IMG/VR virus record: IMGVR_UViG_3300023179_000009
Location: 62,001 to 126,000 of that record
Length of the DNA: 64,000 bases
Direction: 5' to 3' (one strand)
The stretch's first letter is position 1, and each line of letters opens with the position of its first letter. A model generated the notes under the pieces. It ran no database searches. It was not told the DNA's origin and saw only the letters and a program-made list of their open reading frames with translations. Shown in pieces: positions 12,838-64,000 of the stretch. The position numbers were made by a program, and so were the translations under genes.

Positions 12838-14151
12838 TTAATCTTTCCAAAGTGTTTTCATTTCATCTAATTTTGCCCCAAATTTTATTTCTACTTTCAT
12901 TTTTAATCCGGGACAAATAACGGATTCTGCTTCGCATACATTTTTTATTATTTTGTAAATTTCACGAGCATACTTTATTTCGCAAATCAATCCAAATCCA
13001 TCATGAACACTAAATGCCAGATGTGATTTGTTTTTATCGATTGCATTATATAACAAAATTAATTTTTCTTGACAAGCTGTGGCTGCTACTCCTTGTACAA
13101 CAAAGTTTCTAGCCAAATAAGATTTTCCTTCTTCAAAATTACGAGGGCGACCAAAAAAATCTTCTATAATATTTTTTTTAGCCATATCTTGTTTTTCTTG
13201 CATCCAACTCCACGCCGTTGGAAATCTCTTTTTAACTCTTTCGATAATATTGTTCGATAACTCATCTGATATTTTTAAGTTATTTGACAAACCATTAGAG
13301 CCACAACCGTACATTACTGGTAAAAATATTTTTTTTGATATCTTTCTCTTGCTATCTGTGTCACAATCATCTTCTGTGATTATTTTGTAAATTTGTTCAT
13401 GCAAATCTTTTCCTGAATCTAAAATCTCTTTAAGATTTTCATCTTTTGATAACCATTGTAAAACTGTAACCTCACAATGTCTAAAGTCTGAGCAAACGAA
13501 TCTTAAGTCATACCCCTTAGGTTTCAAGGATTTTTTGACATCTGGCCCCATATTGTGGGGCAAATAACTTTTTACATATTTCTTTACACTATTCATTCTT
13601 CCATTAATTTGACCCTCTATTTCGTAGTAGGGGAATTCGCATCTTTTTTTCTCCAAATTCAAAAGAGGACAAGTCTCTATTTCTGGAAGAACTCTCAGGG
13701 CGAGAGGTAGGTGAATGTTTTTAAAAAGATTTTGCCAATTTTTATTTTTTAAAATCTCTTTAATCCTATATATGCACTCGTTGTAGTTTTCTGGGATTGG
13801 TTTTTTGATTCCTAGAAAATTTTCTAATATTTTTATGTCAAATATGTTTGTTGTAGGGTTTAAAAACCTTTTTGAAAAATAAAAAAAATACGAACATAAA
13901 CCTTTTATATTCCAAACAAATAGACGATCAATATTTTCTTTTTGAAATATTGTTGCATCGAATAGAGATATAATTTCAATAATATTATCATCATTAACAT
14001 CTATCTCTAAAGTTTTTGTCTTGCTAATAATTATTATTTTAAAAGGCGCATTAACCGTGAAGTCGGGCGTTTCTGGGATGGTTTTTAAAAAAACAATATC
14101 TTTTTTATTTAATAAATCTACAACCGCATCGACTGAGGATTGGTCAATCAT
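12838..14151 (-). CDS. polA: Compact family A DNA polymerase
   Basis: Motif A SDFRHCEV, motif B RKISKKIFLPVMYG, motif C SVHDG; 437 aa. Confidence 0.85.
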   Translation of the reverse strand: MIDQSSVDAVVDLLNKKDIVFLKTIPETPDFTVNAPFKIIIISKTKTLEIDVNDDNIIEIISLFDATIFQKENIDRLFVWNIKGLCSYFFYFSKRFLNPTTNIFDIKILENFLGIKKPIPENYNECIYRIKEILKNKNWQNLFKNIHLPLALRVLPEIETCPLLNLEKKRCEFPYYEIEGQINGRMNSVKKYVKSYLPHNMGPDVKKSLKPKGYDLRFVCSDFRHCEVTVLQWLSKDENLKEILDSGKDLHEQIYKIITEDDCDTDSKRKISKKIFLPVMYGCGSNGLSNNLKISDELSNNIIERVKKRFPTAWSWMQEKQDMAKKNIIEDFFGRPRNFEEGKSYLARNFVVQGVAATACQEKLILLYNAIDKNKSHLAFSVHDGFGLICEIKYAREIYKIIKNVCEAESVICPGLKMKVEIKFGAKLDEMKTLWKD

Positions 14152-54137: not shown

Positions 54138-54674
54138 GTGAAAAATAAAAGATTTAGTCATAGTCTTAAACAAAAGTACGATTTGCTCGGTAAAAAATTA
54201 GCCGCTGAAATAATGCAAGACATTGTTAAGGCAAAGTTAATCACAGATAATCTTAAAGAAGATTCTGGCGACTTCACAGACGGTTTTTGGGACCAAAAAT
54301 ATCGTCTTCCCAGTGGCAAAGAATTAAAAGTTGAGCCAGAGATGAAAGATGAAAAGTGGTGGGGAAATCAATGGTCTTCTTCAAGGCCATTTCGATATGA
54401 AGACATGGATATTCCCTTTAGAAAAGCAAAAAATCAAGCACACCTTCACATCGTTATCAGTACTTGTGAGAATTTTGCTTTTTTACTTACTAGAGATGCC
54501 ATGAATGAAGCTCTTGAAGAATCTGGCGGAATGCCTAAGATTAAGAAAACAATTTATGAACCTAACGGTGCGGCCTACTTTAGCACCCCAGTAAATAAAG
54601 GTTATTTTGTTTACAGGAAAAAAGATGGTCGTTGGGCTAAGTGGAAAAAATTAGCAAAGGAATTAGTTAAATGA
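54138..54674 (+). CDS. Hypothetical protein
   Basis: 178 aa, SD AAGGAG. Confidence 0.65.
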   Translation: MKNKRFSHSLKQKYDLLGKKLAAEIMQDIVKAKLITDNLKEDSGDFTDGFWDQKYRLPSGKELKVEPEMKDEKWWGNQWSSSRPFRYEDMDIPFRKAKNQAHLHIVISTCENFAFLLTRDAMNEALEESGGMPKIKKTIYEPNGAAYFSTPVNKGYFVYRKKDGRWAKWKKLAKELVK

Positions 54675-55753
54675 GGATACAAAATGAGATTTGTTTAGAC
54701 TATTCAGATGTTTTGATTTGTCCAAAAAGAAGCGAGTCTCCGAGTAGAAAAAATGTAATTTTAAAAAGAAAATTTACATTTTTGAACTCAAAACAAACTT
54801 GGGAAGGTGTTCCTTTGGTGGCAGCAAACATGTCAACCATAGGCACGTTTGCGATGGCTAAAGTGTTTAATAAACATGGCATGAAGGTTTGTTTACACAA
54901 ACACTACACAGTTGAGCAATTAGTTGATTTTTTTAAAGACAATCAAGCTTTTTACACACTTGGCATTAAAGATTTTGATTTTGAAAAATTAAATCATTTT
55001 GTAAATCAGCATGGTCAGCCTCCTAAGTATATTTGCTTAGATGTTGCAAACGGTTATACAAAGTTTTTTGTTGAAAAATGCAGACAAATCAGAGATAATT
55101 TTCCAGAATCGGTTTTGATGGCCGGAAATGTTTGCACTCCAGAAATGGTTCAAGAACTTCTTCTTTCTGGTGGCGTGGATATTGTTAAAATTGGTATTGG
55201 CGGCGGGTCTGCATGCACCACAAGATTGGTAGCCGGTGTGGGAGTACCCCAATTCACGGCTGTGACAGAATGTGCGGATGCCGCACATGGATTAAGAGGT
55301 CACATTGTGGCCGATGGTGGTTGCGTAACATCTGGTGATGTGGCGAAGGCATTTGGTGGTGGTGCTGATTTTGTGATGCTTGGCGGCATGTTAAGCGGAC
55401 ACGAAGAGTGCGAAGGAGATTGGGAATACGAGTGGAAAACACAATCGGGTTTTTTTCAACCAATAGATCCTGGGTACCCTACCGAAAAGAAAAAGAAGAC
55501 TTTGCTTTTTTATGGCATGAGCAGCAAAGAAGCCATGGAAAAGTTTAATGGAGGTCAATCTGGCTATCGAGCTAGTGAAGGAAGATCAGTTCGTGTACCC
55601 TATAGAGGATTTGTGGAAGATACTCTTCTTGAAATAATGGGTGGAGTTCGAAGTGCTTGCACTTATGTCGGGACAGAGAGTTTGAAAGATTTTAGTAAGT
55701 GTTGTACATTTGTTCGAGTCAACAACACCCACAACAAGGTTTTTGAAAAATGA
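54671..55753 (+). CDS. guaC: GMP reductase
   Basis: LDYSDVLI, DVANGY, KIGIGGGSACTTR, ADGG, RSACTYVG; no CBS domains. Confidence 0.93.
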   Translation: MRIQNEICLDYSDVLICPKRSESPSRKNVILKRKFTFLNSKQTWEGVPLVAANMSTIGTFAMAKVFNKHGMKVCLHKHYTVEQLVDFFKDNQAFYTLGIKDFDFEKLNHFVNQHGQPPKYICLDVANGYTKFFVEKCRQIRDNFPESVLMAGNVCTPEMVQELLLSGGVDIVKIGIGGGSACTTRLVAGVGVPQFTAVTECADAAHGLRGHIVADGGCVTSGDVAKAFGGGADFVMLGGMLSGHEECEGDWEYEWKTQSGFFQPIDPGYPTEKKKKTLLFYGMSSKEAMEKFNGGQSGYRASEGRSVRVPYRGFVEDTLLEIMGGVRSACTYVGTESLKDFSKCCTFVRVNNTHNKVFEK

Positions 55754-56215: not shown

Positions 56216-59043
56216 TTGGAAACTACAGGATACGAAAACCTTCATAGACATAGCGATTTTAGCCTCAAAATTTAGGGGCCTTAATGACGAAAGTCATTAA
56301 GCAAACTGGATGAATTCGGGGAAGCCCTAACGTAAAGACGAGGGTAATCCCGAGCCAAGCATGTAATGCATTACATGAAGGTGTAGAGACTACTGGCGAG
56401 GTTTAGCCCTCTTAATTACCAGCAAGAGCGTCCAGCACCCCTAGGGGTGATGATATAGTCCACTCCACAAGAAACTGTGGGCAAAAGTGCTTAGACGGGT
56501 TTGCAAAAGTATCTGAATATGCCGAGTATCAAAAGCAAATAAATCAAAAGTATTTGTGTATCACCGATCATGGTGTGATGGGGGCTATTCCACAACAAGT
56601 TGCAGAATCTGAAAAACATAATTTATATCCTTTGTTTGGATGTGAACTTTATGTTAATCCGATGCAACCAAAAGTTTCTTCACGATCAGAGTCGGCGGAG
56701 TTTCGTAAATCTTTAGAAGATGAAGCAACGCAAAAAAAGTTTGATAAATCTTATCATTTATTGGCCATAGCCTACAATGATGAGGGTTATTCTAATCTTG
56801 TTCGTTTAACTTCTTGGGGCTGGATACACGGCTTCTATAGAAAGCCTAGGGTAAATCATGAAGCACTCATGAAATATAAAGAAGGAATTGTGTTCACCTC
56901 CGCCTGTGCCAACTCAGAAATAGCAAGAGCTTTTTTTGATGGTGGCGACGAGGCTGGCTTCGCCATGTTGGAAAAATATATGGCTATGTTTGGTGAGCAT
57001 TTTTATCTTGAACTTATGATGCTCGATTTTAAAGATCAAAAGCCTTATGATGCTTTTTTAATTCGTGCTCATGATAAGTATCATGTTCCGCTGACAATGA
57101 GCACCGATTGTTTTGTTAAAGGCACTTTGGTTCTAACTAATTTTGGTTTCAAAAATATCGAAGAAATTAAAGTTGGCGATAAGGTTTTTACTCATAAAAA
57201 CAGGTGGAGGTTAGTTGAACATGTTGGATCACGTTCACTAAGATCAAATGAAAAAATTTACCGTGTATCAACTAGTGCTGGTACATTTGCTTATGAAGCT
57301 ACGGGCAATCACGAAGTATATGTGGCCACTTATGAAAAAAATAAATGGAACTTTGATTGGGTAAGAACAGACGGATTGAAATCAAAAGAACACCACCTCA
57401 CAGTTCCTAAGATAAGTGAATCTAAAGTTTTCTCCGAAAAGGATTTAAGCGAAATAGATATTTTGTCCTTCTTGAAAAAAGAAGATTTTCAAGAAGGAAC
57501 AGACTACAAATCATCCAGAAAAGGCAACATGGGTTGCCGCCTTCAGTTCAACAGGGACACTCAAGAATTTTGGTCTTATCGTGGTTGGGATAGAAAATTT
57601 AGAACCACTATTCCCAGAATGTTAAAGGTAGATGATGATTTTGTTAAAATGTTGGGATGGTATATCGCTGAAGGTTGGAGTGAAAAAAATAGCAATCAGG
57701 TGGGTTTTGCTTTTCACATAGAAGAAAAACATGTAGCTGAGTGGTTAATTTCTTATTTTTCACGTTTTGATATTATTGCAAAGATTTATAAGGTCTCTGA
57801 GAACGGTATAGCAATTCGTTTTTCTTCAGTTGTCTTTAATCGTCTTTTGGGTCAAATGTGTGGTTTTGGTGCTAAAAACAAACATCTACCGAAGCCCAAC
57901 AATCAAGTTTGGCTAAAGATGTGGTCGAAAAGACAACTTTCTATGATTATTCGTGAGTATTGGCGTGGCGATGGGGGCAACGCTGCAAATAATGATGGTT
58001 TTATTTTCACATCCACATCTAAAATTTTAATACAAGAGATCGCTTTTGTTTTTAATTCTTGTGGTGTTTTTTCTTTACCTTGTGAAGAAAAAAATAGAAA
58101 AGATACATGGAATACCAAAAAATATATATCCTACACGGGAGGAAGAGGCGATCAAGTGTTGTCTTTTTTAACGAATGGAGATTGTAAGCCTTTTTTGCAC
58201 AAGGAAGTAATTGAATTTAAAGATTATTATTTGGTGCCAATCAAAGAAATCACTGCTCTTAAACACCAAGAACAAGAAGTTCACTGTTTTCAGGTAAAGG
58301 ACGATCATTCGTTCACTGCTAATCTTTACGCTGTGAGTAACTGCCACTACTGTCTTAAAGAGCAAAGTCATAATCAACGTCTTATGCTCATGCAGCAAAA
58401 CAAAAGAACGCTTGCTGAGATGGAGGCACTTGTAGAATCCGGCCAAGCAGAGGATCTATTTGAACTACAAGACACAAATCTATGGCTGAAGAGTGAGGAT
58501 GAACTAAATGAAATGTGGGAAGAAAAATTTCAAGATGTTATCGATTATGAACTTTTCAAACAATCCAAAGCAAACACAGTCAAGATTGCAGAGTTTGCCA
58601 AAGGCGTACAAATCAATAAAGAAATAAAACTTCCTAAAATAAATGACGCAGATGCACTTTTGTGGGAAGAAATCAAAAAAGGTTTTATGAAGCGTGGTTG
58701 TCCTAGAACTCCTGTTTATATAAAGCGAATCCGTGAAGAATACGATCTAATTTCAGAGAAGGGCTTTTCTAGTTACTTTTTAATTCAAAAAATGATGGTG
58801 GATGAAGCTCGAAGGAAGAGTCCAGAGATATTAGGTTTTGGAGACGGATCAGAAGCCGTTGGTCCTGGTAGAGGTTCGGTTGCTGGCTCTTTGGTTGCCT
58901 ATTGTCTTCGTCTTCATGATGTGGAGCCAATATTCCACGATTTGAGATTTAGTCGTTTTCTAAGTCCAGCACGTGGTGGCAAGCAAATGAAAATTCGCCA
59001 CACAATAGACCCAATATCTCATGAATCAATCAATTTGGATTAA
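56216..59043 (+). CDS. dnaE: DNA polymerase III alpha, N-terminal part only (PHP plus start of palm); exons 56216-56265 and 56490-59043; contains intein
   Basis: TTG start after AGGAGA; spliced HRHSDFSLLDG, TDHG, GCE, STD|CHY, GPGRGSVAGSLVAY, RFSRFLSPAR then stop. Confidence 0.9.
56266..56489 (+). ncRNA. Group I intron (224 nt, no ORF) in dnaE
   Basis: P GAATTCGGGGAA, Q AATCCCGAGC, R GTAGAGACTA (56383), S GATATAGTCC (56452); U.G in P1, terminal G; removal restores the frame. Confidence 0.92.
57109..58341 (+). mobile_element. Intein with LAGLIDADG endonuclease (411 aa) in DnaE PHP domain
   Basis: CFVKGTLVLT...VGDKV, ATGNHEV, MLGWYIAEG, REYWRGDG, ...AVSN|C. Confidence 0.93.
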
Positions 59044-59936
59044 TATCTGTTCATCATTCTTCGCATATATGATTTCATCAATGCTTTTTGCAAATTGTGA
59101 ACAGCGGGATGATCTTTAAACATTTCGGGATTCATTTCGGGCATTTGGTCATCTTTTTCCATTGAGGCTTCCATGTCCTCATCTTCCATGCCTTCCATGT
59201 CCTCATCTTCCATGCCTTCCATGTCCTCATCTCCCATGCCTTCCATGTCCTCATCTTCCATGCCTTCCATGTCCTCATCTTCCATGCCTTCCATGTCCTC
59301 ATCTTCCATGCCTTCCATGTCCTCATCTCCCATGCCTTCCATGTCCTCATCTTCCATGCCTTCCATGTCCTCATCTTCTTCATCGTGATCAACTTGGTCA
59401 TCATCATGATCTTCTTGGCTTAGTTGATTGTGAAAAGGAGCGGCAACTTCTTCGTTCATGGCTCTTGCCAACTTGTTACACATGTCTGGTCCGTATGATT
59501 CGTGGGCCATAACCTCAGAGATGTGTTTGTAGGTTTCACGGTGATTCAAACACTCTGCCACAAGACAGCCTAGTAAACCACTCTGTTTTAGGTTTCTTAC
59601 TAAAGTTTCAATAATAACAGGGTTTTTAGAAGAGGCTTTTGTTACTTTTGATAAAAGAGCAGACTCCTCAACAGTAGGCAATTTGACAGATTTTTTTTCA
59701 TTATTTGCTTCTTGAGTTTTTGGCTCATAAACCAACTCGTCATCGCCTTCGCCTGCTAATCCTTTTGATGAATTTTTTTTACCCTTGGTTGTTTTAGCAA
59801 CATAAGGAGATTTGCCACCTTCTGGGCGATCAGGTGAGGTTGATGGGTCCACATTATCTCCATCGTTGCATACCTTGGGCTTGTCTTGTAATTTTCCTTT
59901 AGAATCCAAGTATTCATCAAATTTCATAAAAGCCAT
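59040..59936 (-). CDS. Acidic repeat protein, capsid-targeting-like N-terminus
   Basis: MAFMKFDEYLD; EDEDMEGM repeats; SD GAGG. Confidence 0.75.
   Translation of the reverse strand: MAFMKFDEYLDSKGKLQDKPKVCNDGDNVDPSTSPDRPEGGKSPYVAKTTKGKKNSSKGLAGEGDDELVYEPKTQEANNEKKSVKLPTVEESALLSKVTKASSKNPVIIETLVRNLKQSGLLGCLVAECLNHRETYKHISEVMAHESYGPDMCNKLARAMNEEVAAPFHNQLSQEDHDDDQVDHDEEDEDMEGMEDEDMEGMGDEDMEGMEDEDMEGMEDEDMEGMEDEDMEGMGDEDMEGMEDEDMEGMEDEDMEASMEKDDQMPEMNPEMFKDHPAVHNLQKALMKSYMRRMMNRY
59169..59378 (-). repeat. 24-bp coding tandem repeat, 8.75 units
   Basis: EDEDMEGM units; GDEDMEGM variant at units 3 and 7. Confidence 0.95.
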
Positions 59937-60174: not shown

Positions 60175-60786
60175 TTGGATCAAAAAAAAGATTTAAATTG
60201 GGAAACTGCTTCTTTGGATATGGAGCAAAAAAATTACCGAGGAGAAACTGGCAAATCTCGTAATAGAAGATTAAAAGAAAACTGGTTTGAAAAGTTTGCT
60301 CCTGAAAACCAAACAGGTATTGATATTGGTTGTAACGATGATCCTTTAAATGAAACTTTTCGACGTTATGATGTGATTTTCGGAGATGGAGATGCCACTA
60401 ATATGGTGGGTGTTCCAGACAACGTCTTTCATACCGTGTATGCAAGTCATGTTTTGGAACATCTTCAATTTCCCCAAAAAGCAATACGCAGGTGGTATCA
60501 AATTTTAAAACCTGGAGGCCACTTGATAATCGTTGTTCCCCACCGTGATTTGTATGAAAAAAAACGATTTCCTCCAAGCAATTGGAATCCAGAACACAAA
60601 TATTTTTGGCTACCAGAAGACGAAGACCCGCCAGCAACAAAAAATTTGAAAAAAGAAGTTCTTTTGGCAATACCAAATGCTAACATAGTCCAGTTTAGGG
60701 TTTTAGATGACGGTTATGATTATTCTCTTGAAAACAACGAACACGCTATAGGAGAATTTTCGATAGAGTGTATTGTAAAAAAATAA
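60175..60786 (+). CDS. Class I SAM-dependent methyltransferase
   Basis: GIDIGC, GDAT, YASHVLEH, LKPGGHL; TTG start after GAGGAG. Confidence 0.85.
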   Translation: MDQKKDLNWETASLDMEQKNYRGETGKSRNRRLKENWFEKFAPENQTGIDIGCNDDPLNETFRRYDVIFGDGDATNMVGVPDNVFHTVYASHVLEHLQFPQKAIRRWYQILKPGGHLIIVVPHRDLYEKKRFPPSNWNPEHKYFWLPEDEDPPATKNLKKEVLLAIPNANIVQFRVLDDGYDYSLENNEHAIGEFSIECIVKK

Positions 60787-60788
60787 TT

Positions 60789-60816
60789 TTTACTTTCTGC
60801 CTTTTAGGTGTATAAT
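60789..60816 (+). promoter_or_regulatory. tmRNA promoter TTTACT-N16-TATAAT
   Basis: -10 box ends 9 nt before tmRNA G1. Confidence 0.65.
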
Positions 60817-60825
60817 TACTGAGTT

Positions 60826-61417
60826 GGGGTCGTAAAGGTATCGATTGGATAACGAGAGACTCAATGGCAAGTCGAGGTTGGTCAATGGCCTCGTTAAAAA
60901 TTGACCAAAGCCTTAACTGGCAAAAATAGTTACGCAATGGCTGCTTGATAAAAAGAGCAACCACGGACTGCGAATGCGAGCGGGTAGCATTCAAAAGTTC
61001 GTTGTCAAATCCCGCTGGACTAGTGCGGTCAACTTGCGTCTAGTCGAGAAAATAGGTTGAAAAGTCCGTCAGGAATCCTGTTCGTTGGAGTCTCGGCGGT
61101 CTGATAAAAAACGAAACAAACTTGTAGAGGTTGTTTTTCAAATTATCGCAAGACAGGGGTTCAGGTCGAGCCGTCAATAAATGAAAGTTTATTGATTATG
61201 ATTGGATGAATTCGGTGAAACCTTAACGAGTAAAGTCGAAGGCAATACCGAGCCAAGCCCAAGATACATCTTGGGAAGGTGTAGAGACTACTAGAGGAAT
61301 AAAGTTTCCTTAATAACTAGCATGAGCGTCCAACGCCTAAAACCGCAAGGTTATGGTGAACATATAGTCCATTAACTAAGAAATTAGTTGGGGAAATATC
61401 GACTCCCCTCGACTCCA
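60826..61417 (+). ncRNA. ssrA: tmRNA, intron-containing; tag (A)GKNSYAMAA
   Basis: Acceptor stem GGGGUCG/CGACUCC-A with G3.U70; TTAACT then ORF 60919-60948 and tandem stops; spliced T-arm AGGGG-UUCGACU-CCCCU. Confidence 0.93.
61161..61398 (+). ncRNA. Group I intron (238 nt, no ORF) in tmRNA T-loop
   Basis: P GAATTCGGTGAA, Q AATACCGAGC, R GTAGAGACTA (61281), S CATATAGTCC (61361); guide GGUCGA-GCC pairs both exons. Confidence 0.9.
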
Positions 61418-61420
61418 CTA

Positions 61421-61452
61421 AAAAGAGAGGAAGAAATTCCTCTCTTTTTTTT
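61421..61452. terminator. Bidirectional terminator after tmRNA
   Basis: AAAAGAGAGGAA-GAAA-TTCCTCTCTTTT. Confidence 0.85.
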
Positions 61453-61454
61453 GT

Positions 61455-61907
61455 CTAAAGTTTTCTTCTTTGTAGAGGAGAAGGAAGCACAAATCCTTTT
61501 CCATCAAGATCTGCCGAACCCGGCAATGCTACAATTGAATCTTGTTGGAACCAATTGGCCAAATACAACAAAACTGGAGTTAGTACTTCTTGCCATGTGA
61601 ATATTGGCGATTTCACCAACCAAATCCTATAAGCCTTCACAGATAATTCACAGACACCTGATATGTTAAATATGCCCGTAATGAATGGGTGTTTTGTTAA
61701 ACTTGTTTCGTAGTCTTCTTTATCTATTGCTGTTTGGTAAATTGGGGGTATTTGTCGTATGTGAATGTAAGCCGCACTATCCGATCTTGTGTTTTCATCT
61801 TGGTTAAATTCGATTCGATAACGCAAAGGGTATTGGTTGTAAGACGGCGACTCGCCACCAATTTGAACACCAAATCCAACTAAAATTTCTTCGTTAAATG
61901 TTGCCAT
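61455..61907 (-). CDS. Hypothetical, Nfu/NifU N-terminal-like segment
   Basis: IFNISGVCELSV...LVK...WQEV pattern. Confidence 0.45.
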   Translation of the reverse strand: MATFNEEILVGFGVQIGGESPSYNQYPLRYRIEFNQDENTRSDSAAYIHIRQIPPIYQTAIDKEDYETSLTKHPFITGIFNISGVCELSVKAYRIWLVKSPIFTWQEVLTPVLLYLANWFQQDSIVALPGSADLDGKGFVLPSPLQRRKL

Positions 61908-61974: not shown

Positions 61975-64000
61975 ATGTCGAAGCCAGCGAAAACATTGCT
62001 GAACAATTATTTTAAAATAAAAACAGAATACAATAAAATGCCAAAAACTTTACAGGGAATTGATGATTTAGGAGATTATGATAATACTTCTATTTCAACA
62101 TATGTACATTGGACAACAGATGATTATAGGGTTTTTGTTCCTGCTGCGCCCACTATTAAAAGTTTAATACCGGGCGTTTATGAAATGCACAAGAGCGATA
62201 ACATTGGTTTATATTTTGAAAAAATACCAGTACGTTCAGAAGGTCTCCTAAGATTCCCTGACACCAATTCAGAGCGTGTTGTAAAAGAGATTCAAAAATT
62301 TTGGGAAAGAGAAGATGTTTTTGAATCGTATAGTTTAACGTATAAGCGGGGAATCCTGCTATACGGCCCCCCAGGTTGCCATGCCAAGGGAACGAAAATT
62401 TTGATGTACAACGGCGATCTTAAAAAAGTTGAAGACATAGTTGTCGGTGACGAGGTTATGGGACCAGACAGTCGGCCTAGGCGTGTTTTGGAACTTATAA
62501 GAGGCCAAGATCAAATGTATAAAATTACTCCAAATCGTGGCGAACCTTTTGTTGTGAACGGTCATCACATTTTGAGTTTACAAAGAAGCAGCAAAAGAGA
62601 CTGCGCAACGCCAGAAATATTAAATATTTCTTTAAATAATTACAAAAAATTATCTAAGCCATCTCAAGTCAAATATAAATTACGTCGTTGTGCTGTAGAT
62701 TTTTCGAATCTATCAAATGAAGTAATCGTAGATCCTTATTTTTTAGGTGTTTGGTTAGGAGACGGCTCAGAGAATAAAACCGAAATCAACACCGCTGATA
62801 AAGAGATAAAAGATTATTTATATCAAATAGCAAGTAGTTATAATCTACACGTAACAGAGAGAAGGAAAACGGATTCTATTTGTTGCAGTTATACACTCTC
62901 TAGTAATGGAGGCATTGGCGAAAATGGCTTGCGTAATGATTTGAAAAAAATCGGGGTATTTAATTCAAAACACATTCCAAATGAATATTTTGTGGCTTCA
63001 AGAGAAGTCCGCTTGCAACTTCTAGCAGGGATAATTGACACAGACGGTGGTTATTCAACGGCTTCTTGGAGGAAGAATCAAAAATTTAAAAATAAAGGCT
63101 ATAAAGGTTATTTTGAAATAATTCAAAAGAGGGTCGATCTATCCAATCAAATTGTAAAATTGGCAAGAAGTCTTGGATTTGGAGTTACTATTCGTAGTTG
63201 TAAAAAAACAATTAAAAAAACCGGGTTTGTAGGAGAATATCAAAGAATTAGTATTTTTGGAGACATTTCCATTATTCCTACAAAAATTCTTAGAAAGAAT
63301 GCTCTTAAAGGTCGTGCAAATAAAGACCCACTTCGCACGGGAATATCTTTAATAGAATCTTTGGGCTTTGGTGATTTTTATGGCTTCACGCTGTCGGGAG
63401 ATCATCTATACCTCACAGATGATTTTATTGTTCACCACAACTCTGGTAAATCGTGTACAATTCAATTAATTATGGAAGATGTGGTGAACAGAGAAGGAAT
63501 TGTCATAAAGTTCACAGATCCTTTTTTGTTTACCCAAGGCATGCGAGTTCTTAGACAGATACAAGAAGATACACCTGTGGTTGTCATAATTGAAGATATA
63601 GATTCTTTTTTAGAAATTTATAACGAATCTGAGATACTAAATGTTTTAGACGGAGTAAACGAAGTCAATAAAGTTGTTTTTTTGGCTACCACTAATTACC
63701 CAGAAAAACTCGGAGCAAGAATAGTAAACAGACCCAGTCGTTTCGATAAAAGGTTTAGAATAGGTTACCCTTCAAAGACTTCAAGAAGAATGTATTTCGA
63801 ACACTTGATTGGCGAAGGAGATGAAAATAAACTTAAACAAAAAATATCAGATTTAAATTTGGATTTGGATCGCTGGGTCGAAGACACAGACGAGATGTCG
63901 GTTGCCCATCTCAAGGAGTTGTTTATACAAGTTGTTATTATAGGTGACACTTATGAAGAATCAATAGAAACTTTAAAAAGTATGAAAGAAAACCTTGAAG
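61975..64000 (+). CDS. AAA+ ATPase with intein (3'-truncated; not in ORF track)
   Basis: GILLYGPPG|SGKS, IIEDID, LNVLDG, ATTNYPE, NRPSRFD; frame open to window end. Confidence 0.9.
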   Translation, partial: MSKPAKTLLNNYFKIKTEYNKMPKTLQGIDDLGDYDNTSISTYVHWTTDDYRVFVPAAPTIKSLIPGVYEMHKSDNIGLYFEKIPVRSEGLLRFPDTNSERVVKEIQKFWEREDVFESYSLTYKRGILLYGPPGCHAKGTKILMYNGDLKKVEDIVVGDEVMGPDSRPRRVLELIRGQDQMYKITPNRGEPFVVNGHHILSLQRSSKRDCATPEILNISLNNYKKLSKPSQVKYKLRRCAVDFSNLSNEVIVDPYFLGVWLGDGSENKTEINTADKEIKDYLYQIASSYNLHVTERRKTDSICCSYTLSSNGGIGENGLRNDLKKIGVFNSKHIPNEYFVASREVRLQLLAGIIDTDGGYSTASWRKNQKFKNKGYKGYFEIIQKRVDLSNQIVKLARSLGFGVTIRSCKKTIKKTGFVGEYQRISIFGDISIIPTKILRKNALKGRANKDPLRTGISLIESLGFGDFYGFTLSGDHLYLTDDFIVHHNSGKSCTIQLIMEDVVNREGIVIKFTDPFLFTQGMRVLRQIQEDTPVVVIIEDIDSFLEIYNESEILNVLDGVNEVNKVVFLATTNYPEKLGARIVNRPSRFDKRFRIGYPSKTSRRMYFEHLIGEGDENKLKQKISDLNLDLDRWVEDTDEMSVAHLKELFIQVVIIGDTYEESIETLKSMKENLE
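62377..63441 (+). mobile_element. Intein with LAGLIDADG endonuclease (355 aa) in Walker A
   Basis: CHAKGTKILM, VVNGHH, YFLGVWLGDG, LLAGIIDTDG, ...IVHHN|S. Confidence 0.95.

What the first reader, a model, noticed from the sequence alone, without database searches (positions are those of the whole stretch)
58342..59043. DnaE stops just before the catalytic aspartates, with no split-intein tag
Seen: after GRGS...RFSRFLSPAR the protein ends (GGKQMKIRH...*), about 456 aa once spliced. Established: the PDIDxD catalytic motif directly follows this position in DnaE. No Cys/Ser-initiated intein block A follows, unlike the cyanobacterial split DnaE, and no C-terminal half lies in this window. Inference: a two-subunit replicase assembled non-covalently, or a stand-alone PHP proofreading module.
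Basis: partly seen in the sequence, partly recalled or inferred. Interest (0 to 1): 0.6.

Follow-up and report, generated by a model that had tools for sequence, protein, structure and literature searches.

The report
Phage DnaE polymerase in two genes
A 459-kb freshwater phage encodes its bacterial-type replicative DNA polymerase as two separate genes cut inside the catalytic centre, an arrangement kept in hundreds of related phages, so the enzyme is most likely assembled from two proteins that each supply half of the active site.

Summary
The DnaE-like gene (TTG start 56216, group I intron 56266-56489, LAGLIDADG intein 57109-58341) ends at TAA 59041-59043, giving a 456-aa mature protein. It stops 22 residues after RFLSPAR, where contiguous DnaE has PDxDxD.

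The missing half starts 81 nt beyond the window end (extrapolated 64081-68124), on the same strand, 5 kb downstream. It holds PDIDID, KFD, fingers and HhH. The genome has one PHP domain and one finger domain.

All 48 related viral contigs and most of 388 metagenomic protein clusters end at the same point. Four independent metagenome assemblies show no indel there.

The cut is not clean. The N-half tail looks like a degenerate copy of the catalytic strand. The C-half begins with a conserved ~90-aa copy of the NTP-binding module that lacks GRGS.

A co-fold of an intein-free relative's pair scores 0.84 against 0.00 for controls. It puts the N-half GRGS loop against the C-half aspartate strand.

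Best reading: a non-covalent two-subunit replicase with a composite active site and PHP proofreading. Closest precedent is the split minimal PolIII alpha of other jumbo phages (Iyer 2021). This is a new variant of a known kind.

The parts
56216..56265 (+). N-half exon 1: TTG start after AGGAG, encodes M-E-T-T-G-Y-E-N-L-H-R-H-S-D-F-S-L(first two bases), holding the PHP HxH motif
   Evidence: intron-less relative L004 reads ...EHLHRHSDFSLLDGF
56266..56489 (+). group I intron (224 nt) interrupting the PHP N-terminal motif
   Evidence: Rfam RF00028 98.4 bits at 56256-56481; I set the boundaries from exon U / intron-terminal G and the S-L-L-D-G junction of relatives
56490..57108 (+). N-half exon 2, PHP domain up to ...STD (equivalent of Mtb D226)
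   Evidence: Pfam PF02811 86 bits; metal-ligand motifs DHG, CELY, YHLL, SACA, STD|CHY read; ligand set named in PMC5636811
57109..58341 (+). LAGLIDADG intein, 411 aa (CFVKGT...VSN|C), inserted between two PHP metal ligands (D|CH)
   Evidence: Pfam Hint_2, LAGLIDADG_3, Intein_splicing; most relatives lack it
58342..59043 (+). The flagged interval, which is the C-extein of the N-half. It holds the end of PHP (CHY) and the NTP-binding half of the palm: GPGRGS at 58861-58878 and RFLSPAR at 58954-58974. A 22-aa tail GGKQMKIRH...NLD follows at 58975-59040, then TAA at 59041-59043.
   Evidence: PF07733 profile positions 5-98 of 260; tail RGG[KR]x-h-K-h-x-F conserved in relatives
59040..59936 (-). Convergent gene for an acidic repeat protein (MEDEDMEG repeats). 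Its stop overlaps the N-half stop. It lies between the halves in the split phages.
   Evidence: homologues in 13 loci and upstream of the contiguous dnaE in LR756511.1; no Pfam or PHROG hit
61975..64000 (+). AAA ATPase gene with an intein in Walker A. It runs on to extrapolated 64065 and is a conserved neighbour, not part of the polymerase. The C-half of DnaE itself lies just outside the window and cannot be given a row of its own. It is at extrapolated 64081-68124 = G000:C1:126081-130124 = L003 9081-13124, + strand, with a GTG start after GGAG, and is 1347 aa. It has a ~90-aa GRGS-less head, PDIDID (D95/D97/D99), KFD260, thumb, fingers, an intein (residues 464-891), HhH, and a C-terminal part that looks OB-like by eye (no Pfam hit).
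   Evidence: AAA gene. C-half:

Best explanation
The phage's family-C replicative polymerase is encoded as two genes whose products assemble non-covalently.

The 456-aa N-half supplies:
- a PHP 3'-5' exonuclease that keeps all nine metal-ligand positions by motif inspection;
- the NTP-binding half of the Pol-beta-like palm (GPGRGS and the R of SRF).

The C-half (919 aa after its intein is removed) supplies:
- the three catalytic carboxylates (PDIDID and KFD);
- thumb, fingers and HhH, plus a C-terminal part that looks OB-like but was not confirmed.

The polymerase active site therefore exists only at the interface of the two proteins.

Each half also keeps a vestigial copy of the other's boundary element. 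The N-half ends in a pseudo-catalytic strand in which the aspartates look replaced (inspection only). The C-half begins with a conserved helical head that resembles the NTP-binding module but lacks GRGS. Both lie in the predicted interface and probably act as assembly elements.

Shown: gene structure, conservation of the break, complementary motif retention, homology of the head.
Predicted: binding and active-site geometry.
Inferred: function as the phage replicase, and the assembly role of head and tail.
For: 1. The domain complement is divided between two genes.
- PF07733 positions 5-98 lie in the N-half and 100-259 in the C-half.
- The 459-kb genome holds exactly one PHP domain and one finger domain.
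- It has no PolB, a DnaB helicase and only a short PolA-like gene.

2. The break is conserved.
- All 48 IMG/VR relatives (45-79% identity) end 9-50 aa after RFLxxxRGG.
- 388 protein clusters match at E<=1e-20; among the 120 listed, most are 455-483 aa, on contigs up to 693 kb.
- More distant N-halves, down to ~31% identity, end at the same strand.

3. The halves co-occur.
- The C-half lies 1-14 kb away in every contig long enough to show it, usually on the same strand.

4. Conservation is complementary.
- Invariant in N-halves: G398, R401, G402, S403, R429, R435, G436, G437.
- Invariant in C-halves: P-D-x-D-x-D and K-F-D, while the head has N-x-N-N where GRGS would be.

5. Relatives carry an intein exactly at GRG|S, the kind of site inteins favour in essential motifs.

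6. The co-fold of the intein-free L013 pair supports binding.
- ipSAE 0.84 (three runs, 0.83-0.84) against a best control of 0.00.
- That mark was reached by 58 of 80 solved complexes and 2 of 110 mismatched pairs.
- About 335 contacts, partner pLDDT 90, runs agree in at least 94% of contacts.
- N-half 394-406 (GRGS loop) touches C-half 93-95 (D-Y-L of DIDYL, the end of the catalytic strand). The whole N-half tail 428-448 and many head residues between 31 and 70 are in the interface.

7. The head is homologous to the N-half module: hhalign 85.9%, E 5e-6.

8. Each half has its own Shine-Dalgarno sequence and start codon.

9. No assembly error: four independent studies show no indel.
Against: - Binding and activity are predicted, not measured. 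The co-fold may simply rebuild the known single-chain DnaE fold from memory, and it was run on a relative (about 53-61% identical by BLAST segment), not on the window's own pair.
- Coordinates of the co-fold were not available, so I do not know where head and tail sit.
- No RNA data show that both genes are expressed together.
- No beta-clamp (PF00712) was found in the genome, so the rest of the replisome is unclear.
- The AF2 monomer of the C-half is only moderate (pLDDT 72, pTM 0.39).
Confidence: 0.8

Rival explanations
1. The two genes work independently. The N-half is a stand-alone PHP exonuclease or phosphoesterase with an inert palm remnant. The C-half is a PHP-less polymerase that uses its own head in place of the NTP-binding module.
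For: - The C-half head is a confident, conserved helical module (pLDDT 87-95) homologous to the canonical module, so it could occupy that position.
- The halves can lie 14 kb apart, or on opposite strands (L050).
Against: - The head has lost GRGS and the RF arginine in every sequence. The N-half keeps them invariant although they have no role in PHP chemistry.
- The co-fold puts the N-half GRGS loop, not the head, against the catalytic strand.
- The catalytic strand is the least confident part of the C-half folded alone (pLDDT 41).
Confidence: 0.13
2. The halves are rejoined after expression, by protein trans-splicing (atypical split intein) or by RNA trans-splicing of a split intron.
For: - The locus is crowded with inteins and group I introns.
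- More distant phage dnaE genes are interrupted at or within a few codons of the PD|IDxD codon. In L096 the 1.3-kb interruption ends in a group I intron.
- L038 shows a fractured-looking intein elsewhere in the C-half.
Against: - There is no Hint match in the 22-aa tail and, by inspection, no intein motif in the head. The head is homologous to DnaE itself.
- Joining would duplicate about 80 residues.
- There is no intron-like RNA at either junction at E<=0.01.
- Opposite-strand genes lie between the halves, the spacing varies from 1 to 14 kb, and one relative has them on opposite strands.
Confidence: 0.04
3. The truncation is an assembly error, a recent disruption or a decaying pseudogene.
For: Without comparison, a DnaE that stops before its aspartates looks broken.
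Against: - Four independent assemblies agree base for base, with no indel.
- The same end is found in 48 contigs and most of 388 clusters, with invariant functional residues.
- The only C-family domains in the genome are these two genes.
Confidence: 0.02

Closest known systems
Split minimal DNA polymerase III alpha of group 2.2 jumbo phages (Iyer, Anantharaman, Krishnan, Burroughs, Aravind 2021, Viruses 13:63; PMC7824862)
   Same: [quoted passage not shown] The cut is topologically the same as here. The authors likewise predict reconstitution from two proteins.
   Different: That version is minimal: core nucleotidyltransferase plus template-binding domain only, with no PHP or other PolIII domains, and it accompanies a family B polymerase. 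Here the enzyme is full-size (PHP, fingers, HhH), the genome has no PolB, and each half carries a vestigial overlap. I did not compare sequences with theirs, because no accession was in the text I read.
Contiguous DnaE of huge phages (LR756511.1, 595 kb; P0019, P0024, P0026, P0027)
   Same: 46-54% identical. They sit in the same 100*-supported clade, with the same domain order and neighbouring AAA and acidic-protein genes.
   Different: A single ORF reading ...RFLSKFRKDYPDVDVDF..., with no tail and no head. The AAA and acidic genes lie upstream of dnaE instead of between the halves.
Fragmented NrdA of Aeromonas phage Aeh1, split by the homing endonuclease gene mobE (Crona et al. 2011, PMC3045599; the details are from my own knowledge of that work)
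   Same: An essential phage replication-related enzyme cut into two genes that reassemble non-covalently, with extra sequence at the break helping assembly.
   Different: A different enzyme. There an endonuclease gene sits in the break. In this window none does, although endonuclease-like ORFs lie between the halves in L058, L071 and L016/17/23.
Cyanobacterial split DnaE joined by the DnaE split intein (Caspi et al. 2003, cited in PMC3919608); 'fractured genes' (Dassa et al. 2009, PMC2677866)
   Same: dnaE in two genes at separate loci.
   Different: Those halves end and begin with intein halves and are ligated. From my own knowledge the cut lies much further along the protein. Here there is no intein half at the break.

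Membership tests
C-family DNA polymerase, DnaE type (PolIII alpha) | N-terminal PHP domain | tested here: met
   PF02811 86 bits. It is the only PHP domain in the genome. By motif inspection all nine metal-ligand positions (H, H, D, H, E, H, C, D, H) are present (ligand set from PMC5636811).
C-family DNA polymerase, DnaE type (PolIII alpha) | Pol-beta-like palm with the NTP-binding GS motif and three catalytic carboxylates (E. coli D401, D403, D555) in one polypeptide | tested here: not met
   All motifs are present but divided: GPGRGS and SRF in the N-half; PDIDID and KFD in the C-half. The pair meets the feature. Neither protein does alone.
C-family DNA polymerase, DnaE type (PolIII alpha) | Finger domain, HhH and OB fold C-terminal to the palm | tested here: inconclusive
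   PF17657 fingers 135.6 bits and PF14579 HhH 61 bits are met. There is no Pfam hit for the OB fold; the sequence looks OB-like by eye only.
Intein-split DnaE (cyanobacterial type) / fractured genes | The N-fragment ends in an N-intein (Hint block A starting C/S) and the C-fragment starts with a C-intein ending HN + C/S/T | tested here: not met
   The tail is 22 aa with no Hint match. The head aligns to DnaE 319-396 and to the N-half module.
Split minimal PolIII alpha of group 2.2 jumbo phages (Iyer 2021) | Cut between the NTP-binding and Mg2+-binding subdomains, with the two units encoded by separate, distant genes | tested here: met
   description in PMC7824862
Split minimal PolIII alpha of group 2.2 jumbo phages (Iyer 2021) | Minimal architecture without PHP or other PolIII domains, accompanying a family B polymerase | tested here: not met
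   PHP, fingers and HhH are present. There is no PF00136 match in the genome.
Homing-endonuclease-fragmented genes (Aeh1 nrdA type) | An endonuclease gene occupies the break between the two halves | tested here: not met
   Between the halves in the window lie an acidic protein, PspC, a methyltransferase, a tmRNA, an unknown ORF and an AAA ATPase. Endonuclease-like ORFs occupy the gap only in other lineages.

The most novel reading that the evidence does not exclude
The split is a transferable architecture, not a one-off accident.

- The boundary elements (the ~90-aa GRGS-less head and the pseudo-strand tail) are dedicated assembly modules that let a family-C polymerase work with an active site built across a subunit interface.
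- This architecture has arisen or spread at least three times among phage dnaE lineages, at a site that mobile introns, inteins and endonuclease genes repeatedly target.
- The head of a second, phylogenetically separate split lineage (L058) is closer to the window-clade heads than to the canonical module of its own lineage. This hints that the head travels with the split.
Probability: 0.35. Interest if true: 0.75.

Novelty: new variant of a known kind. Interest (0 to 1): 0.6.

Why it matters
**For polymerase biology.** Family-C polymerases are studied as single large chains. A natural, widely conserved version cut between the nucleotide-binding motif and the catalytic aspartates would be a ready-made system for several questions:
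- how the Pol-beta-like palm is assembled;
- whether exonuclease and polymerase modules can be exchanged or regulated separately;
- how fragmented essential genes persist in phages.

**For annotation.** Pipelines call the 456-aa product 'DNA polymerase III subunit alpha'. The partner gene has to be paired with it, or these genomes will seem to carry a broken replicase.

Tried and rejected
**Rejected readings**
1. Clean cut. phmmer against solved DnaE shows both halves covering E. coli ~319-396. Direct BLASTP of the overlap is weak (E 0.1); the profile comparison was needed.
2. Contiguous forms nested inside the split clade, suggesting re-fusion. A 209-column tree showed this. The AU test does not reject split monophyly (p 0.23), and a 773-column tree makes the window-clade splits one group (support 71). 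I dropped the re-fusion claim.
3. Intron or trans-splicing RNA at the break. Rfam at E<=0.01 over 17 kb finds only the PHP intron, the tmRNA and its intron.

**Searches that led nowhere**
4. Cultured-phage relatives. The best INPHARED hit is the uncultured LR756511.1; cultured phages reach at most 33% identity and are contiguous.
5. The search for related loci with P0124 alone found nothing; the alignment A5 was needed.
6. The contigs of P0124 and P0063 were too short to settle the partner at first. A later tblastn found a head 1.8 kb downstream of P0124 (L053).
7. ARAGORN finds no tmRNA at 60700-61500.
8. PMC8485763 held no statement on GS-motif residues. The NTP-binding role rests on Iyer 2021 and on general knowledge of the Pol-beta nucleotidyltransferase hG[GS] motif.
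9. No Pfam or PHROG name for the acidic protein, the 164-aa downstream ORF or the nested 325-aa ORF.

**Limited value**
10. The AF2 monomer of the C-half (pTM 0.39) was too weak for a fold search, so none was run.
11. No RNA run holds the locus, so expression is untested.
Full report
**Context**

The window is bases 62001-126000 of a 458,813-bp IMG/VR virus record, 91% complete by CheckV. G+C is about 28-39%. Near-identical DNA occurs in freshwater and lake metagenomes from at least five studies. This is a huge freshwater phage.

**The observation**

The ORF ending at 59043 carries a PHP domain, a LAGLIDADG intein and the first 98 of 260 positions of the PolIII-alpha catalytic family PF07733.

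- The true N-terminus lies upstream. A TTG at 56216, after AGGAG, opens M-E-T-T-G-Y-E-N-L-H-R-H-S-D-F-S-L.
- A 224-nt group I intron follows (Rfam 98 bits).
- The frame resumes as L-D-G-F-A-K, exactly as in the intron-less relative L004.
- Removing the intron and the 411-aa intein (57109-58341) leaves 456 residues.
- The flagged interval 58342-59043 is the C-extein.
- It aligns to E. coli DnaE 315-396 and M. tuberculosis DnaE1 221-411, ending at RFLSPAR.
- A 22-residue tail and TAA follow. In contiguous DnaE the catalytic D401/D403 come a few residues later (PMC3919608).
- No Hint or intein signal lies in the tail.
- Contigs from four independent studies cover 58342-59197 without an indel. One strain differs by a synonymous T>C at 59040 that preserves both overlapping stop codons.

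**Where the rest is**

A genome-wide search with PF07733 finds two matches only: profile positions 5-98 in this gene, and positions 100-259 at C1:126354-126866.

- The second match lies in a 1347-aa ORF at L003 9081-13124, extrapolated window 64081-68124. It starts with GTG eight bases after GGAG, 81 nt beyond the window end.
- It contains PDIDID, KFD, the finger domain (135.6 bits), an intein at FNK|...|SHS and an HhH domain.
- The genome holds one PHP and one finger domain, no PolB, no DnaQ, a DnaB-like helicase and a short PolA-like gene.
- Five kilobases separate the halves. They hold two minus-strand genes (an acidic repeat protein and a PspC-domain protein), a methyltransferase, a tmRNA gene with an intron, another minus-strand ORF and an AAA ATPase with an intein.

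**Conservation**

- All 48 related IMG/VR contigs (45-79% identity) stop 9-50 residues after RFLxxxRGG. The tail pattern RGG[KR]x-h-K-h-x-F is conserved.
- Where enough DNA is held, the C-half lies 1 to 14 kb away, nearly always on the same strand; in L050 it is on the opposite strand.
- A word-indexed search finds 388 clusters at E<=1e-20. Among the 120 listed, most are 455-483 aa, on contigs up to 693 kb. Where a name is given, JGI annotates them as 'DNA polymerase-3 subunit alpha' or 'hypothetical protein'.
- An exhaustive HMMER search shows N-halves ending at the same strand down to about 31% identity.

**The cut overlaps**

- The C-half aligns to E. coli DnaE from residue 319, so about 78 residues are represented in both genes.
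- The first ~90 residues of the C-half form a conserved head (R30, E34, Y46, L50, N64, N67, L68, L73, L74 invariant). It has N-x-N-N-L-L-V where canonical DnaE has G-R-G-S-x-x-G-S-L-V.
- hhalign matches head columns 5-48 to N-half 329-372 (85.9%, E 5e-6).
- The N-half tail (K-Q-M-K-I-R-H; relatives M-K-L-R-F or L-Q-L-E-F) lines up by eye with P-D-V-D-V-D-F, keeping the hydrophobic positions and replacing the aspartates. This is inspection only.
- So each half keeps one working and one degenerate piece of the region around the break.

**How it probably works**

N-halves keep G398, R401, G402, S403, R429, R435, G436 and G437 invariant (L013 numbering). These belong to the NTP-binding subdomain of the Pol-beta-like palm (Iyer et al. 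2021; the hG[GS] motif is general knowledge), not to PHP chemistry.

C-halves keep P-D-x-D-x-D and K-F-D invariant and never have GRGS.

Several relatives carry an intein exactly at GRG|S.

I co-folded an intron- and intein-free pair from relative L013: N-half 448 aa, and the first 540 aa of the C-half, each with my own alignments.
- The score was 0.84 (three runs, 0.83-0.84) against a best control of 0.00.
- That mark was reached by 58 of 80 solved complexes and 2 of 110 mismatched pairs.
- There were about 335 contacts, partner pLDDT 90, and the runs agree in at least 94% of contacts.
- The N-half GRGS loop (394-406) touches C-half 93-95 (D-Y-L, the end of the catalytic strand).
- The helix after that strand packs on N-half 376-384.
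- The whole N-half tail and many head residues between 31 and 70 are in the interface.
- This may partly be the model recalling single-chain DnaE. It shows that the two halves can rebuild that fold, not that they bind in a cell.

Folded alone, the window's C-half has a confident head (pLDDT 87-95) but its least confident stretch at the catalytic strand (41).

By motif inspection the N-half keeps all nine PHP metal-ligand positions. This is the pattern of active PHP proofreaders such as Mtb DnaE1 (PMC5636811). The intein sits between two of them (D|C-H).

**Evolution**

- On 773 concatenated columns the window-clade split enzymes are one side of a branch (support 71). They sit inside a 100*-supported clade with five contiguous huge-phage enzymes, including LR756511.1.
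- An earlier 209-column tree nested the contiguous ones inside the split group, but the AU test does not reject split monophyly (p 0.23).
- In LR756511.1 the acidic-protein and AAA genes lie upstream of the contiguous dnaE. In split phages they lie between the halves. This fits a duplication or rearrangement followed by complementary decay. That is inference.
- A second split group, with tails ending ...C-T-F-E-V, sits in another clade among contiguous enzymes.
- Its member L058 has a C-half 80% identical to the contiguous P0057, yet also carries a ~100-aa head. Starred branches force at least three changes of state.
- The L058 head matches the window-clade heads (96.2%, E 2.4e-9) far better than the canonical module of its own lineage (6.9%). 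The head may therefore spread with the split.
- Endonuclease-like ORFs lie between the halves in L058, L071 and L016/17/23.
- In four more distant phages the gene is interrupted at or within a few codons of the PD|IDxD codon. In L096 the 1.3-kb interruption ends in a group I intron.
- The site is a hot spot for mobile elements.

**Comparison with the literature**

- Six full-text searches found no description of this full-size split.
- The closest precedent is the split minimal PolIII alpha of group 2.2 jumbo phages. It has the same topological cut, but no PHP or other domains, and it accompanies a PolB.
- Fragmented Aeh1 NrdA is a mechanistic analogue.
- The cyanobacterial intein-split DnaE is not: no intein halves flank this break.

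- I sent no joined (spliced) sequence of the window's N-half or C-half to any search or fold tool. Exteins were searched piecewise by reference, and the joined step was left out. The co-fold used a naturally uninterrupted relative.
- Inside local tree scripts only, BLAST-aligned pieces on either side of inteins were placed in one row.
- The C-half lies outside the 64000-base window, so it has no row of its own under 'parts'. Its coordinates are given in the last row there and above.

Noticed in passing
window 60834-61390 (+): A tmRNA gene (Rfam 82.7 bits) runs straight into a group I intron (65.5 bits). The tmRNA alignment stops in the 5' half of the T-arm (GGGGUUCAGGUC) where the intron begins, so the intron appears to sit in the T-loop. 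ARAGORN does not call the gene.
   Followed up: partly
L003 10470-11753 (extrapolated window 65470-66753), nested ORF L003 10732-11709: The C-half intein (PF14890, 36.8 bits) starts with Thr (FNK|TLTEDT) and ends VVTSN|S, without the usual penultimate His. Its middle ~330 codons in the DnaE frame are low-complexity. A 325-aa Cys-rich ORF with an IWIEVDGPFH motif is nested in another frame and has homologues in other dnaE loci. The DnaE frame stays open over 428 codons, which composition alone would give with P ~2e-15.
   Followed up: partly
L038 12984-14572: At the same intein site, the DnaE frame of relative L038 stops after about 106 intein residues. A 377-aa ORF in another frame follows before the C-extein resumes. 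This looks like a 'fractured gene' or split-intein arrangement.
   Followed up: partly
window 61975-64000 (continues to extrapolated 64065): The AAA ATPase has an intein inserted in the Walker A motif (GPPG|C...HN|SGKS). The gene is conserved directly upstream of the C-half in 13 loci, and upstream of the contiguous dnaE in LR756511.1.
   Followed up: partly
window 59040-59936 (-): An acidic protein with about ten MEDEDMEG repeats. Its stop codon overlaps the N-half stop. Homologues lie beside the N-half in 13 loci; in L038 it is the only homologue of the window's intervening genes detected in the ~1-kb gap between the halves. No family match. Short-read assemblies break in its repeats.
   Followed up: partly
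L096 10594-11884; also L107, L112, L117: More distant phage dnaE genes are interrupted at or within a few codons of the catalytic PD|IDxD codon. In L096 the 1.3-kb interruption ends in a group I intron (86 bits) and holds an endonuclease-like ORF. The other three gave no Rfam match.
   Followed up: partly
L050, L051, and proteins P0003, P0004, P0005, P0010, P0014, P0017, P0023, P0025: Relatives of the N-half carry an intein inserted exactly at GRG|S of the NTP-binding motif, with the motif's Ser as the +1 residue.
   Followed up: partly
loci L005, L008, L009, L012, L015, L021, L024 and others, about 100 nt upstream of the ITDHG motif: Many relatives have the N-half frame broken just before ...LDG, at or near the place where the window has its group I intron. 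The intron site therefore seems widely occupied in this clade.
   Followed up: no
window 54671-55753 (+) and 12868-13554 (-): An IMPDH/GMP-reductase family gene (207 bits) lies about 460 nt upstream of the N-half (with a 123-aa ORF between). A short PolA-like gene (441-aa open frame, 102 bits) lies elsewhere in the window.
   Followed up: no
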